From the IMG/VR virus record IMGVR_UViG_3300030202_003189, positions 1 to 64,000 of that record: 64,000 nucleotides of DNA. One strand, 5' to 3'. The notes under the pieces were generated by a model that worked only from the letters and a program-made list of their open reading frames with translations, had not been told where the DNA came from and did not search any database. Each line of letters starts with the position of its first letter. Positions within the stretch are counted from its first letter, which is position 1. A program made the translations under genes and the position numbers. Of the stretch, positions 7,695 through 53,960 are shown piece by piece.

Positions 7695-7884
7695 AGAGTT
7701 ATTAAATAATAAGTGGATTAAATTATTATTCAGCGTTTCAATCATGTTGTCAGCGGTTCCATCTATCTATCAGGATTTTACATATGGACATAGTGGTGAA
7801 TGGACCCATTACGGTATGATGTTAGTCGGTGTTTTATATTTTATAGAGTCACTCTTGTGGACATTAGACATATGGAAGAAATAA
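7684..7884 (+). CDS. Small two-TM membrane protein
   Basis: ATG at 7684 preferred over the track start; two hydrophobic helices. Confidence 0.7.
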   Translation: MRTKELLNNKWIKLLFSVSIMLSAVPSIYQDFTYGHSGEWTHYGMMLVGVLYFIESLLWTLDIWKK

Positions 7885-8351
7885 TAAAAAAAGAACTATG
7901 GGATCATTACTCAGAACTCCCAAACCCATCATGGTATGAATATAAAGAAAATATGAAAAGCTTAGAACAACAATTAAAACAATTTGAGGAGGATATCTTT
8001 GCGGGTAAGGATATAGACATAACAGAATTTTATGTATTAAAAAAAGCATTACTAGATATTACACTGAGTGGTCATGTTGTGGAGGATTATAGTGACCTCT
8101 TAGAACTTCATGGGATATTAGAGAATATGTTAGATAGACGTCATAACGAACTTATGAATAAGAGATTAAATCTCTTAACCATTTGGTCTACGATATTTCT
8201 ACCTCTTTCATTCTATACTGGATTATGGGGAATGAATTTTGATGATGTTCCTTTAATCACAGATGATAATGGATTTTGGGTGTTCATGGGATTGACGATA
8301 ATAACTATTGGAGGTATGTGGATGTACTTCAAAAATAATAAATGGATATAA
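7872..8351 (+). CDS. corA: Truncated CorA-family Mg2+ transporter (stalk plus two TM helices)
   Basis: NKRLNLLTIWSTIFLPLSFYTGLWGMNFDDVP is the CorA TM1/GMN signature; only about 160 aa. Confidence 0.85.
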   Translation: MEEIIKKELWDHYSELPNPSWYEYKENMKSLEQQLKQFEEDIFAGKDIDITEFYVLKKALLDITLSGHVVEDYSDLLELHGILENMLDRRHNELMNKRLNLLTIWSTIFLPLSFYTGLWGMNFDDVPLITDDNGFWVFMGLTIITIGGMWMYFKNNKWI

Positions 8352-14445: not shown

Positions 14446-14516
14446 ATGTAATGGGATTCCATTGAAGACTATACACTAAAACACCATTGAGGTTGTATAC
14501 ATTTAGACACGCAAAC

Positions 14517-14542
14517 AAAGAGACCCTTAGGGGTCTTTTTTT
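14517..14542 (+). terminator. Intrinsic terminator
   Basis: AAAGAGACCC-TTAG-GGGTCTTTTTTT hairpin plus T-tract. Confidence 0.8.
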
Positions 14543-14953
14543 ATGGGATGCGATCCCCTATATGTTCCCCACTAAGAACGTTTAATACATGTCACCATAT
14601 ACAGTGTATGAGGGTTTATTTATCCTTTACACAGTACTTTTCCCCATTTGTACCATAATTATTGTTAAAGGATTCCTTTACTAATCATTACTACGGAGCA
14701 CTCTTTACCACCATTTCCCACTTACTACCACTATCTACCACCACTATAATGTGGGTTTTCATCGGCAAAAACCGTGATTTATAAAATGACACTATGAGTG
14801 GATCTAGTAACTAAACCTCGAAAAACGTCTCTACCTGCGTTGCCCCTTTCGGAAATTGTTTCATTTAAGTCCCGGATTTTTTGACAAGTTGCTAACAAAT
14901 CGTGGATTCTCTCGTGGAAAACCCCGATAATTGTTGATAACTAATGGTTCCAT

Positions 14954-15092
14954 AATTAGGCCACGTTAATTATTAGTTGTACCTTTAGGGTGCAGGTGGG
15001 TGGGTAGTGCGATGCCCGGAACTATTTCACGTGCAAGCATACCTTCCCGCCCGCCCTACAAAGGTACGGAAAATTCCTGACATGGCCAAATT
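14954..15092. ncRNA. Candidate structured small RNA between convergent promoter-like arms
   Basis: Imperfect inverted repeat; GGTGGGTGGGTAG can pair with CTTCCCGCCCGCC using G-U pairs; no ORF. Confidence 0.4.
15059..15090 (-). promoter_or_regulatory. Bacteroidota sigma-70 promoter TTTG-N20-TACCTTTG (minus strand)
   Basis: Exact consensus and spacing; points into non-coding GC-rich sequence. Confidence 0.7.
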
Positions 15093-15229
15093 ATTTACCT
15101 GACAATATTACCACTGTTAATAACTCCTGGGAAAGTTATGAACATCTAAATTATTTTGTCACATTGTCATAGATTAAATTAGGCCACGTGGAAAACATTT
15201 CGTACCTTAGGGGTGGTAGGGCGGGCACC

Positions 15230-15550
15230 TAGGCCCGTGTCCTAACCACGCTAGCTAGTCACTCCCTGTCCCTTACCCCCCTGACCATCCACTACACACC
15301 CCCCTGGGGGTAGGTGGCATGACCCCCCTATGAATGAATGAGTACCCCCTAGGGGCCCCCTCCCCCCTGGGTACCCCCCGTGTATCCCCTCTTACAGTAG
15401 GTATGACACCACTCATAAGGGGCGGCGACGCTGCAAATAAATTTTCTGAGAAATTTTTGCTTAGAGGTTTGAGTTATTAATTACCCTATAATAAAAGAGG
15501 GGGTGGGTATAATTTGGTTTTAGTGAAAAATTTTTTGCCAGAATTTTTTA
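15230..15550. other. GC-rich C/G-tract island followed by phased A/T tracts (possible pac/terminus/origin)
   Basis: Many C5-C6 runs and short palindromes at 15275-15425, then AAATTTT-type tracts about one helical turn apart. Confidence 0.4.
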
Positions 15551-15574
15551 ATGGATGTTTTGGTATTTATAGTT

Positions 15575-15682
15575 ATGATTAAAATAAAACACATATTGTT
15601 TATACTACTATTATTTTCCGCAGGGTGTTCAGTAACTAGTGACGTTCCTAAGGATCATAAGGAGTGTTGTACAAAGAAATGA
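15575..15682 (+). CDS. Small lipoprotein (35 aa, not in ORF track)
   Basis: MIKIKHILFILLLFSAG-CSVTSDVPKDHKECCTKK has a lipobox; TATTTATA at 15564. Confidence 0.65.
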   Translation: MIKIKHILFILLLFSAGCSVTSDVPKDHKECCTKK

Positions 15683-15765
15683 TATTAGGGACTATAATAA
15701 TAGTGAGTATCTATTTAACCTTTAGATTTATATTCTGGGTAATAGAAAAATTAGGGGATGATTAA
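15679..15765 (+). CDS. Small membrane peptide (28 aa)
   Basis: ATGA-coupled hydrophobic ORF. Confidence 0.45.
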   Translation: MILGTIIIVSIYLTFRFIFWVIEKLGDD

Positions 15766-15994: not shown

Positions 15995-15995
15995 G

Positions 15996-16070
15996 TCGGG
16001 GTGGCAGGATTCGAACCTGCGGCCTCCACGTCCCAAACGTGGCGCGATAACCGGGCTACGCTACACCCCG
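15996..16070 (-). tRNA. trnP: tRNA-Pro (UGG), CCA not encoded
   Basis: Minus strand CGGGGTG acceptor stem, CCACG-TTTGGGA-CGTGG anticodon arm, GCAGGTTCGAATCCTGC T-arm. Confidence 0.97.
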
Positions 16071-51506: not shown

Positions 51507-53960
51507 TTAACTCACCTTAACTTTTATTTTATTTGTTTTTTTATCGTAACTTAATGATAGTGTTGATCCCTTTTTAACAGAAGATCTTAACATTTCTTCG
51601 GCTATGGCATCTTCTAGATAATTAGAAATTGCTCTATTCATTGGTCTAGCACCATACTTATCACTATATCCCTTTTTCATTACAAGATCTTTTGCGCTTT
51701 TATTGACCTTAATAGTGTAACCCATTTCTAACATTCTCTCTTTAAGGAACCCTAAATGTACTTCTAGTATCTTAGAAATATTATCTTTTGAGAGTTTATT
51801 GAAAACTACAATATCGTCTAACCTATTAATAAATTCAGGATTGAATCTCTTCTTCAAATTCTTGTCAATTATTGATTGTACTCTTTCTTCATAGTAGTCA
51901 TCACTATTTGAAGTTCTAAATCCTACACCTTCTCCAAAATCGTCTACTTCTCTCATACCGATATTTGAGGTTAAAACAACTAAACAATTTCTAAAATTAA
52001 CTTTTCTTCCCATCCCATCTGTCATAAACCCATCATCTAAAAGTTGTAATAAAGAGTGAAATATATCCGGATGTGCTTTTTCCACCTCATCAAAAAGTAC
52101 CAAAGAATACGGTTTACGTCTAACTTTTTCGGTTAATTGTCCCCCTTCATTGTATCCAACATAACCCGGAGGTGAACCTATCATTTTTGTTGCTGCAAAC
52201 TTCTCAGCGTATTCCGACATATCTACCCTAATTAAAGAATCCTCACTACCAAAAACTTCAAGAGCTAGTTGATTTGCTAATTCTGTTTTTCCAACACCTG
52301 TTGGACCCAAAAACATAAAACTACCTATTGGTTTATTAGGATTTTTAATACCGACTCTATTTCTTCTTAAAGATTTACAAACCTTATCAATTGCCAAATC
52401 TTGTCCGATAATCGAAGATTTTAGTACTTTATCTATATCTAATAGTTTTTGGGACTCATCCTCACTAAGTTTAGTGACTGGGATATTAGTACTTGTAGAT
52501 ATAACCTTTAATATTTGTTCTTCGTCGACAATTGATCGGTCGTTCTGTAATTGGGTTTCCCAATGATCCACAAAGTTTTTTAAGTCAGTTTTTAGAGTTT
52601 TTTCTTTATCCCTAAGACTGGCAGCTTTTTCATATTGTTGTGAAATAACCACTTTATTTTTCTCTTCTTTTATCTGATCAATCTGCTTCTCAACCTCCTC
52701 GATTCTTTTAGGTGGTTGAGCATGAACAGCAACACTCGCCCCAGCTTCATCCAAAACATCTATCGCTTTATCTGGAAAATTTCTATCAGTAATGTATCTT
52801 TCAGATAACTCAACACACTTAATTATTGCTTCTTTAGTGTAAGATACTTTATGGTAATCTTCGTAGGTTTCTTTTATATTATTTAATATGGTAAGAGTTT
52901 CTTTTTTTGTTGGAGGATCAATCATAACTTTCTGAAATCTTCTTTCTAAAGCACCATCCTTCTCAATGTGTTCTCTATATTCATCAAGAGTTGTTGCTCC
53001 AATACACTGTATTTGACCTCTAGAAAGGGCCGGTTTTAAGATATTGGCGGCGTCCATTGATCCGGAAGAATTCCCTGCCCCTACCATAGTGTGTAACTCG
53101 TCAATGAACATAATTATATCTTTATCGCCTCTTACTTCATCTAATAATCCTTTTATTCGTTCCTCAAACTGACCTCGATATTTAGTACCCGCCACTAAAG
53201 AAGTTAAATCTAAAGAAACTACTCTTTTACCCATTAAGGGGCGAGGACACTTTTTCGTTATAATCTTAGTGGCCAATCCGTCAACAATTGAAGATTTCCC
53301 AACTCCTGGGTCCCCAATAAGAACAGGATTATTTTTCTTTCTTCTACTTAATATTTGTGCAATTCTATCTACTTCTTTTTCTCGCCCAATGACAGTGTCT
53401 AGTTTTCCATTTCTTGCTTCTTCTGTAACATCTAGACTAAAAGCATCTAAAATTGGTGTTCCACTCTTTTCTGTTGGGGTTTTTCCTGAGGGAGCTCCCT
53501 CCTCTTGACCAAACGGTTCTTCATTATACATCATACTCATACTTATTAATTCTTTTTTATAGGTTTTATATTCGACTCCAAATTTAAGCAAAAAACGCGA
53601 GACTCCCGAGCTTTTTTGTGCTAAAATTGATAACATTAAATGATGGGAGTTTATTTTGTTATCTTTTAACAGTTTTCTTTCATCATTAACATGATCTAGA
53701 ATTGATTGGGCGTCAGTGGTAAAAGGAATGACCATACGCAATTCCCGGTTCTCTGTGTCAATTGTTAATAACTCCTCTAATAAGGTAGTTATAGAGTCTA
53801 AATCTAACCCCAAATTCAATAATAGCTCACATGAGCTATTCCTCTCATGTTTTAGTATTCCCATGAATAAATGAATAGGTCTAATATATTCTGACTTATA
53901 AACGGTTGCAACGTCTAGACCAGTTCTTATGATTTCTTTCAATGGATATAATTCTTTCAT
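51507..53960 (-). CDS. clpC: ATP-dependent Clp protease ATP-binding subunit (ClpC-type)
   Basis: Clp_N repeats, [11 protein letters not shown] coiled coil, [20 protein letters not shown] (ClpP-docking-like) loop. Confidence 0.95.

What the first reader, a model, noticed from the sequence alone, without database searches (positions are those of the whole stretch)
14954..15228. Convergent host-type promoters bracketing a GC-rich hairpin: candidate sense/antisense small-RNA locus
Three degenerate copies of AATT(A/T)GGCCA(C/T)GT-N10-12-GTACCTT-(A/T)G...GGG(T/C)GGG occur at about 14954 (+), 15092 (-) and 15177 (+). The minus copy is a perfect TTTG-N20-TACCTTTG Bacteroidota promoter. The first two face each other across about 70 nt with no ORF. 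The ends of that stretch (GGTGGGTGGGTAG and CTTCCCGCCCGCC) pair only with G-U wobbles, which favours a structure at RNA level. The third copy fires into the GC-rich island. This could be a regulatory RNA pair, a primer RNA for replication, or an RNA polymerase decoy.
Basis: partly seen in the sequence, partly recalled or inferred. Interest (0 to 1): 0.62.

Follow-up and report, generated by a model that had tools for sequence, protein, structure and literature searches.

The report
Three host stable-RNA-type promoters in phage
The three repeats are real copies of a strong promoter type that Bacteroidota bacteria use for tRNA and rRNA genes, sitting in the only long gene-free stretch of an uncultured marine T4-like jumbo phage, where they most likely launch non-coding early transcripts whose function is still unknown.

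Summary
GGCCAYGT-N12-GTACCTT occurs three times in the 231-kb phage record, all at this locus; none is expected by chance. Each copy is a Bacteroidota -33/-7 promoter (TTWG, 20-nt spacer, TAYCTTWR).

In bacterial genomes the extended motif has 57 exact matches, 55 in Bacteroidota. Nineteen lie 13-90 nt upstream of tRNA genes and two upstream of 16S rRNA. It is therefore a host stable-RNA promoter class.

At least 60 marine metagenome contigs carry a homologous non-coding region. Its parts are four phased TACCAC repeats, TGACA palindromes, one such promoter, a G-tract start, and a C-rich island with an invariant ~21-nt core. Copy 3 is that conserved promoter. Copies 1 and 2 are specific to the window's lineage. 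They converge with predicted starts 63 nt apart across a 73-nt hairpin.

Best reading: an early non-coding transcription locus, with tandem P1/P3 and antisense P2. An early-promoter-plus-iteron replication origin of the T4 oriE type is the main rival.

No transcript data could be obtained. The G-U argument for an RNA-level structure is weak, and no compensatory changes were seen. Nothing matches Rfam.

The parts
14521..14545 (+). Intrinsic terminator (6-bp GC stem plus T7 run) that ends the upstream operon. It marks the left edge of the gene-free region.
14706..14741 (+). Four phased hexamers (TACCAC/TCCCAC) starting at 14706, 14716, 14726 and 14736, an exact 10-nt period. This is an iteron-like array, followed by TATAAT.
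   Evidence: The array is unique in the 231-kb record. It is conserved 250-309 nt upstream of the first promoter in 23 of 31 relatives with enough sequence; the hexamers are kept while the spacers vary.
14954..14991 (+). Promoter copy 1 (P1): -33 TTAG 14956-14959, GGCCACGT 14959-14966, -7 TACCTTTA 14980-14987, predicted start about 14992.
   Evidence: The start is placed by the rule of 4-5 nt after the -7 element (PMC6847099).
14986..15058 (+). GC-rich imperfect palindrome or hairpin between P1 and P2. The G-tract arm GGTGGGTGGG pairs with CCCGCCCGCC through two U-G wobbles. The interior is homologous to the 5' domain that follows the single promoter in relatives.
15055..15092 (-). Promoter copy 2 (P2), a perfect consensus: -33 TTTG 15090-15087, -7 TACCTTTG 15066-15059, predicted start about 15054 reading leftwards. 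It keeps the canonical upstream context TGTCAGGTAAATAA seen at the single promoter of relatives.
14904..14924 (-). Weak terminator-like hairpin on the minus strand, about 130-150 nt downstream of P2. It is a possible 3' end of a leftward P2 transcript.
   Evidence: consensus scan only
15093..15176 (.). Spacer between the divergent P2 and P3, with TGACA/TGTCA elements and an imperfect palindrome (GTTAATAAC ... GTTATGAAC). This is consistent with an inverted duplication of the promoter unit.
15177..15214 (+). Promoter copy 3 (P3): -33 TTAG 15179-15182, GGCCACGT 15182-15189, -7 TACCTTAG 15203-15210, predicted start about 15215. It is the positional ortholog of the single promoter in all relatives.
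15215..15445 (+). Predicted non-coding P3 transcript: a G-tract start, the C-rich island (15230-15400), an invariant core GTATCCCCTCTTACA..GGT at 15382-15402, then a small hairpin and a T-run near 15424-15450.
   Evidence: The core and its flanks are conserved in 64 loci. Reading frames are not conserved. There is no consensus RNA structure and no excess fold stability.
15995..16070 (-). tRNA-Pro (UGG), a neighbour on the opposite strand. It does not use this promoter motif.

Best explanation
The three repeats are three copies of a strong promoter for the host's main sigma factor, each followed by a G-tract at the start of its transcript. The promoter belongs to the class that certain Bacteroidota use for tRNA and rRNA genes. 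The copies sit in the only long gene-free region (about 1.3 kb) of a T4-like marine jumbo phage. Unmodified host RNA polymerase would most likely use them right after infection to make non-coding RNA.

P3 is the ancestral promoter. It launches a transcript that begins with clustered G-tracts, folds into a 5' hairpin against a downstream C-tract, and runs into a sequence-conserved C-rich island. P1 is a tandem upstream duplicate of the promoter plus its 5' hairpin domain. P2 is an inverted duplicate. As a result, P1 and P2 fire towards each other from starts about 63 nt apart across a GC-rich palindrome. This should give complementary 5' RNA segments and mutual transcriptional interference.

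Shown here: the sequence anatomy, the uniqueness of the motif, the promoter class, and conservation across relatives. Inferred: that all three copies fire, the start sites, the RNA ends, and any regulatory outcome.
For: - The motif is unique to this locus, with 0 matches expected by chance.
- All three copies fit TTTG/TAHHTTTG with a 20-nt spacer (consensus from PMC6847099).
- The exact extended motif has 57 matches in the genome collection, which I estimate is far more than chance would give. 55 are in Bacteroidota. 19 lie 13-90 nt upstream of same-strand tRNA genes. Two lie about 205-250 nt upstream of 16S rRNA. One Bacteroidales genome has 13 sites at up to 1 mismatch, against 0 for the control pattern.
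- In related phages the same motif sits 6-45 nt before the ATG of protein genes. It also precedes 75-110-nt RNAs that end at intrinsic terminators of three unrelated sequences.
- In L198, all three copies keep -33, -7 and spacing although GGCCAYGT has decayed in copies 1 and 2.
- The promoter lies upstream of the island in the same orientation in 38 distinct relatives, at 184-1025 nt.
- Shine-Dalgarno-like 4-mers are depleted upstream of genes: 10 of 213 against 27 of 213 in a control window. This fits a Bacteroidota host.
- The hairpin is stable on the + strand (z -4.0).
Against:
- Copies 1 and 3 deviate from the consensus (TTAG at -33; A at -5 in copy 1; A at -6 in copy 3).
- The RNA body after the first ~18 nt is not homologous among relative subtypes.
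- The island shows no covariation or excess stability. A classical structured RNA is therefore not demonstrated.
- There is no Rfam match.
- The extended motif was found in only 4 of 201 sampled genomes of the class, and the host of this marine phage is unidentified.
- The phased TACCAC array is not explained by a simple RNA-gene model.
Confidence: 0.55

Rival explanations
1. The whole 1.3-kb region is a replication origin of the T4 oriE kind. The phased TACCAC repeats would bind an initiator. The early promoters would supply a primer or activating transcript. Its G-clustered 5' end would form a stable RNA-DNA hybrid (R-loop) on the C-rich template. The convergent P1/P2 pair would open the palindrome from both sides.
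For: - The large terminase is of the T4 gp17 type.
- T4 oriE combines evenly spaced direct repeats with dependence on an early-mode promoter. T4 oriF and oriG prime from promoter-derived R-loops (PMC3016281).
- This is the only long gene-free region in the record: 1312 nt against 457 nt for the next longest.
- The four-hexamer array with a 10-nt period is unique in the record and conserved at a fixed distance from the promoter.
- Clusters of three G3 runs are very rare in these genomes. The transcript start holds the only one in G001 and in G003.
- Only the promoter and the first ~18 transcribed nt are conserved, while the RNA body varies. That fits a role for the act of transcription rather than for its product.
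Against: - There is no A+T-rich unwinding element downstream of the promoters; the downstream DNA is the most GC-rich in the region.
- In many relatives the transcript meets an intrinsic terminator after 75-110 nt.
- No initiator or replication gene was recognised nearby.
- GC skew follows gene orientation and shows no switch at the locus.
- The role of the iterons is unproven even in T4.
Confidence: 0.25
2. Only P3 is functional. P1 and P2 are neutral by-products of a recent tandem plus inverted duplication, and the hairpin is simply the inverted repeat that the duplication created.
For: Relatives outside the window's sublineage have a single promoter. The arms of the hairpin are paralogous copies of the G-tract. 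Their T/C differences match a common polymorphism of that tract. No compensatory changes are seen.
Against: The triple layout is kept in L227 and in the clearly diverged L198, and P2 is also present at the cut end of L194. In L198 the -33 and -7 boxes and the 20-nt spacing of P1 and P2 survive while neighbouring bases changed. This points to selection on promoter function.
Confidence: 0.1
3. The element acts at the DNA level. The 150-bp imperfect palindrome at 14946-15099 would be a cruciform or protein-binding site (for recombination, resolution or packaging), or the cluster would serve as a sink that titrates host RNA polymerase.
For: With DNA parameters, the whole of 14946-15099 folds as one long hairpin that includes the promoter boxes (-29.8 kcal/mol). 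Three strong stable-RNA-type promoters lie within 260 bp.
Against: The spacers of P1 and P2 are unrelated, so the palindrome is interrupted. The terminase type argues for headful packaging without fixed ends. Contig ends are not clearly enriched at the locus. Most relatives have one promoter and no palindrome. Three sites could titrate little polymerase.
Confidence: 0.07

Closest known systems
Bacteroidota primary-sigma promoters (-33 TTTG / -7 TAnnTTTG), specifically the tRNA/rRNA promoter subclass TTTGGCCAYGTC-N11-GTAYCTTTG found here in Bacteroidales genomes
   Same: Same two boxes, same 20-nt spacing and same extended GGCCAYGT after the -33 element. In bacteria the motif drives stable RNAs (consensus from PMC6847099).
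   Different: The phage copies are followed by a G-tract rather than the CACCCG-type start seen in bacteria. Copies 1 and 3 have TTAG at -33. The bacterial matches are gut and rumen Bacteroidales, whereas the phage lineage is marine with an unknown host. I found no published description of the extended motif, but I did not search for one specifically.
Face-to-face promoter pairs with transcriptional interference, such as coliphage 186 pR/pL (about 62 bp apart; from my own knowledge, not checked here)
   Same: Two convergent promoters with predicted starts about 63 nt apart, so the transcripts overlap and the polymerases must collide.
   Different: Those pairs control a lysis-lysogeny switch between coding operons. 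Here both transcripts appear to be non-coding, the phage looks lytic and T4-like, and no repressor is known.
Bacteriophage T4 origins: oriE (iterons plus an early promoter) and oriF/oriG (a promoter plus a downstream unwinding element, primed from an R-loop)
   Same: A T4-type phage, evenly spaced short direct repeats, host-polymerase (early) promoters, and a non-coding setting (PMC3016281).
   Different: There is no sequence similarity, and the repeats are 6-mers at a 10-nt period rather than 12-mers. The DNA downstream is GC-rich instead of A+T-rich. Replication activity is untested.
G-rich primer RNAs that form persistent hybrids (ColE1 RNA II; the mitochondrial light-strand promoter transcript at CSBII; from my own knowledge)
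   Same: Clustered G runs in the non-template strand just downstream of a promoter.
   Different: The G-rich part here is only about 18 nt, is followed by a C-rich non-template strand, and in many relatives by a terminator.
Small stable RNAs encoded next to tRNA genes in T4 (species 1 and 2 RNAs; from my own knowledge)
   Same: Non-coding RNAs of unknown function in a T4-type phage, close to a tRNA gene and made from stable-RNA-type promoters.
   Different: There is no homology and no Rfam match. The tRNA here is on the opposite strand and is not co-transcribed.

Membership tests
Bacteroidota sigma-A (-33/-7) promoter | -7 element TAHHTTTG | tested here: met
   P2 is TACCTTTG, an exact match. 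P1 is TACCTTTA and P3 is TACCTTAG, one deviation each (consensus).
Bacteroidota sigma-A (-33/-7) promoter | -33 TTTG at 19-21 nt from the -7 element | tested here: met
   TTTG in P2 and TTAG in P1 and P3. The spacer is exactly 20 nt in all three, and also in L198.
Bacteroidota sigma-A (-33/-7) promoter | The same motif lies upstream of genes or RNAs at promoter distance elsewhere | tested here: met
   tRNA genes 13-90 nt downstream in 19 bacterial loci, and 16S rRNA in 2. Protein genes and terminated short RNAs in related phages.
Bacteroidota sigma-A (-33/-7) promoter | Transcription starts 4-5 nt after the -7 element | not testable with these tools
Cis-antisense small-RNA pair | Two convergent promoters with overlapping transcripts | tested here: inconclusive
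   The promoter sequences converge with predicted starts 63 nt apart. No transcripts were observed.
Structured non-coding RNA (any Rfam family) | A match to a covariance model | tested here: not met
   No match within the locus at E up to 5 in the window except a chance miRNA hit (26 bits against a gathering score of 140). None in 7 relatives at E up to 1.
Structured non-coding RNA (new family) | Base pairs supported by compensatory changes | tested here: inconclusive
   Island: RNAalifold gives -4.8 kcal/mol and 0 compensatory pairs in 47 sequences. 5' region: the G-tract pairs with a downstream C-tract in most subtypes but in shifting registers. Some small hairpins in the type II RNAs look compensatory by eye.
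Intrinsic terminator | A GC-rich hairpin directly followed by a U-run | tested here: not met
   The hairpin at 14986-15058 has no T-run after it on either strand.
Iteron-type or T4 oriE-like origin | Evenly spaced direct repeats | tested here: met
   Four hexamers at an exact 10-nt period, unique in the record and conserved in relatives.
Iteron-type or T4 oriE-like origin | An adjacent A+T-rich unwinding element and an initiator gene | tested here: inconclusive
   No initiator was recognised among the neighbours. A+T-rich stretches exist, but they are the norm in a 34% GC genome.
Iteron-type or T4 oriE-like origin | Replication starts here | not testable with these tools
   Needs read-depth profiles or experiments.
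cos or fixed genome end | A cos- or DTR-type terminase and contig ends clustering at the site | tested here: not met
   The TerL is of the T4 gp17 type. About 14 of 60 contigs end within 200 nt of the core, close to expectation for contigs of about 3 kb.

The most novel reading that the evidence does not exclude
The 1.3-kb gene-free region is the early replication origin of a widespread, uncultured marine T4-like Bacteroidota phage lineage. It would be built from a borrowed host tRNA/rRNA-type promoter whose G-clustered transcript start forms the priming RNA-DNA hybrid, a phased iteron array, and a sequence-invariant C-rich element. Alternatively, the promoter launches a new class of abundant phage stable RNAs: a G-tract leader plus a C-rich RNA that could, for example, occupy the host Rho factor.
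Probability: 0.25. Interest if true: 0.7.

Novelty: new member of a known kind. Interest (0 to 1): 0.45.

Why it matters
The work gives a concrete, testable map of early host-polymerase promoters in an uncultured marine jumbo-phage lineage. It shows that these promoters copy the extended promoter that some Bacteroidota use for tRNA and rRNA genes. That extended motif could itself be useful for promoter prediction and expression tools in this phylum. The work also defines a conserved non-coding module found in at least 60 marine contigs: iterons, palindromes, promoter, G-tract and a C-rich island with an invariant core. No database explains this module. If it is an origin or a new stable RNA, it opens a route into the replication or host take-over of a phage group that has no cultured member.

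Tried and rejected
1. **cos or fixed genome end.** The window has GGGGCGGCGAC, which resembles the lambda cos overhang, and two contigs (L202, L226) end at the same homologous base. I rejected this reading for three reasons. The TerL is of the T4 gp17 type. Relatives do not conserve that string. Contig ends are not clearly enriched at the locus.
2. **Protein-coding island.** Spurious ORFs across the island use different frames in G002 and G003, and indels are not multiples of three.
4. **G-tract leader pairing in trans with the island.** Complementarity is at most 7 nt and is not kept in the window's copies.
5. **G-tract as a Shine-Dalgarno-like decoy.** GGAGG is present in relatives but absent from all three window copies.
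6. **General phage promoter class.** The motif is unique to this locus in the record. The dominant motif upstream of genes is TATTTATA(G).
7. **Known RNA families.** None matched.
8. **Isolated phage relatives.** There are no DNA matches in the phage collection. No relative of the neighbouring 316-aa protein was found in viral contigs.
9. **Neighbouring and inserted genes.** No informative Pfam or PHROG hit.
11. **Naming the host order from the class-level genome sample.** The motif turned up in only 4 of 201 genomes, and no taxon names were given.

These were not passed by reference.

Full report
**Setting**

The window is the first 64 kb of a 231,285-bp IMG/VR virus record with 34% GC. Its large terminase is of the T4 gp17 type, and no isolate is more than 33% identical to it. 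Only 10 of 213 called genes have a Shine-Dalgarno-like 4-mer upstream, against 27 of 213 in a control window inside genes. Several genes carry a Bacteroidota TTTG...TAnnTTTG promoter: 17 strict matches against 6.3 expected. The commonest motif upstream of genes is a phage-specific TATTTATA(G). Together these point to a T4-like jumbo phage of a Bacteroidota host.

The finding lies in the gap 14446-15757. At 1312 nt this is by far the longest gene-free gap in the record; the next longest is 457 nt. A clean terminator at 14521-14545 bounds it on the left. Small ORFs and a tRNA-Pro on the other strand bound it on the right.

**The observation**

GGCCAYGT-N12-GTACCTT occurs at 14959 (+), 15087 (-) and 15182 (+). 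It occurs nowhere else in the window or in the whole record, and shuffles give 0 matches. In all three copies, TTWG is followed after exactly 20 nt by TACCTT. The minus copy is a perfect TTTG-N20-TACCTTTG.

Each copy is followed by clustered G runs. Such clusters are rare in these genomes. In relatives G001 and G003, the only run of three closely spaced G3 tracts in the whole contig is the one just after this promoter.

The 73 nt between copies 1 and 2 (14986-15058) fold into one long hairpin. The RNA + strand gives -38.9 kcal/mol (z -4.0). The RNA - strand gives -32.4 kcal/mol (z -2.5). With DNA parameters the palindrome extends over 14946-15099.

**What the motif is**

Three lines of comparison show that it is a promoter.

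1. *Bacterial genomes.* A scan of one genome per prokaryotic species for TTTGGCCAYGT-N12-GTACCTTTG gave 57 exact matches. By my estimate, about one would be expected by chance for 20 specified bases. Of the 57, 55 are in Bacteroidota, all Bacteroidales MAGs. Nineteen lie 13-90 nt upstream of a same-strand tRNA gene or tRNA cluster. Two are about 205 and 250 nt upstream of 16S rRNA, and one precedes a TPP riboswitch. One Bacteroidales genome has 13 sites at up to one mismatch, against 0 for the control pattern. The extended motif is therefore a host stable-RNA promoter class. It is restricted to certain lineages: only 4 of 201 sampled genomes of the class have it.
2. *Related phages.* The same motif sits 6-45 nt before the ATG of protein genes. 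It also precedes 75-110-nt RNAs that end at intrinsic terminators.
3. *The diverged relative L198.* All three copies keep the -33 box, the -7 box and the 20-nt spacing, although GGCCAYGT has decayed in copies 1 and 2.

Published work on Flavobacterium johnsoniae places the start 4-5 nt after the -7 element (PMC6847099). By that rule, the predicted starts are about 14992 (+), 15054 (-) and 15215 (+).

**Relatives and anatomy**

Pattern scans found three related viral contigs: G001, G002 and G003. A scan for the island core found 80 metagenome loci, 64 of which are true relatives. All are from marine samples. These share a non-coding module, in this order:
- a phased array of four TACCAC hexamers with a 10-nt period, 250-309 nt upstream of the promoter;
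- TGACA repeats and a CTGACA-N3-TGTCAG palindrome;
- one promoter of the type above;
- a conserved G-tract start, GTGGGAGGGYGGGT;
- a C-rich island with an invariant core, GTATCCCCTCTTACA..GGT, and conserved flanks.

The promoter lies upstream of the island, in the same orientation, in 38 distinct relatives. The two are either adjacent (184-314 nt) or separated by a reverse-oriented small gene plus a terminator (566-1025 nt).

Copy 3 of the window is the positional ortholog of this single promoter. Copies 1 and 2 exist only in the window's sublineage: G000, L227 and L198, with L194 cut inside copy 2. The interior of the hairpin is homologous to the 5' domain that follows the promoter in adjacent-type relatives. 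Copy 2 keeps the canonical upstream context TGTCAGGTAAATAA. The window's layout is therefore a tandem duplication (P1) plus an inverted duplication (P2) of the ancestral unit (P3).

**RNA structure**

In most subtypes the G-tract start pairs with a C-tract 60-90 nt downstream, but the register and the partner sequence vary. The RNA body is not homologous across subtypes. The island folds no better than shuffled sequence. RNAalifold on 47 sequences finds no consensus structure and no compensatory pair. Its conservation is at the level of primary sequence.

Nothing matches Rfam, in the window or in relatives.

That argument is weak for three reasons:
- The T/C difference between the arms is a common polymorphism of this tract.
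- Two transitions in the same direction are expected half the time.
- The three sequences that share the hairpin show no compensatory change.

**Interpretation**

The best-supported reading is an early non-coding transcription locus (confidence 0.55). Host RNA polymerase would use three stable-RNA-type promoters. P1 and P3 stand in tandem, reading rightwards into the island. P2 reads leftwards, antisense to the first 63 nt of the P1 transcript. That geometry implies complementary RNAs and polymerase collision. What the RNAs do is unknown.

The main rival is an origin of replication resembling T4 oriE (confidence 0.25). T4 oriE combines evenly spaced repeats with an early promoter, and T4 oriF and oriG prime from promoter-derived R-loops (PMC3016281).
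- In favour: the unique long gap, the conserved iteron-like array, the G clusters next to the promoter, and the fact that only the promoter and the first ~18 transcribed nt are conserved.
- Against: the GC-rich DNA downstream where an unwinding element would be expected, the terminators in many relatives, the lack of a recognisable initiator gene nearby, and the absence of any skew signal.

Smaller rivals are neutral duplicates (0.1) and a DNA-level palindrome or polymerase sink (0.07).

**Limits**

Start sites, RNA ends and expression are therefore all inferred. The host is unidentified: the bacterial matches to the extended motif are gut and rumen Bacteroidales, whereas the phage lineage is marine. 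In one search, four ~80-nt strings copied were typed into a script rather than passed by reference.

**Verdict**

The feature is real and conserved. The small-RNA, primer and decoy roles remain open. I rate it a new member of a known kind (phage early promoters and a non-coding locus), of moderate interest. The surrounding conserved module deserves experimental follow-up.

Noticed in passing
L237-L293 (bacterial genome contigs); for example L255:1557-1588, L253:854-885, L281:540-571: TTTGGCCAYGTC-N11-GTAYCTTTG is an extended promoter consensus in some Bacteroidales genomes. It lies directly upstream of tRNA genes, tRNA clusters and 16S rRNA. One genome carries 13 copies at up to 1 mismatch, yet only 4 of 201 sampled genomes of the class have any.
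   Followed up: partly
window 15230-15445, and L157-L236 around each pattern match: A C-rich island with an invariant ~21-nt core (GTATCCCCTCTTACA..GGT) and conserved flanks (repeated TTTAGCCCCC units, then GGGGGTCAGAGCC) is present in 64 marine loci. It shows no coding frame, no covariation and no Rfam match. Its function is unknown.
   Followed up: partly
window 14706-14741: Four TACCAC/TCCCAC hexamers at an exact 10-nt period, unique in the 231-kb record. They are conserved at a fixed distance upstream of the promoter in relatives. The first unit in many relatives (TTCCACA) resembles a DnaA-box core.
   Followed up: partly
L014, L114, L117, L092 and L105 (other low-GC viral contigs), just downstream of the same promoter motif: A different conserved ~75-nt non-coding sequence follows the same promoter. 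It starts GUC..UGG...CCGAGAC and ends ...AGACUCCAG. It has a conserved 5' hairpin and no Rfam match at gathering score. Nearby sequence again holds TGACA repeats and G/C-rich tracts.
   Followed up: partly
G002 (L151:9646-10092) and G003 (L138:3151-3540): In many relatives a small gene of unknown function (129-148 aa), reverse-oriented and with its own leaderless-type promoter and terminator, is inserted between the promoter and the island. It has no Pfam hit.
   Followed up: partly
whole record G000 and G003, 80 nt upstream of called genes: TATTTATA(G) is the dominant upstream motif: about 25% of genes and 9-10-fold enriched. It is probably this lineage's phage-specific (middle or late) promoter. 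One copy sits just before the small ORF at window 15551.
   Followed up: no
window 51507-53960 (-): An 817-aa ORF with a very strong match to the PHROG family 'ATP-dependent protease' (ClpB/AAA-like; E 2e-245).
   Followed up: no
window 7800-8351 (+): A 183-aa ORF whose C-terminal part matches the CorA-like Mg2+ transporter family (E 7.5e-19). Its N-terminal segment is shared with the gene that follows the island in G001 and G002.
   Followed up: no
G000 (231,285 bp) and G003 (232,028 bp): Two related but heavily rearranged contigs have almost the same length, although CheckV calls both about 70% complete. They may be near-complete genomes.
   Followed up: no
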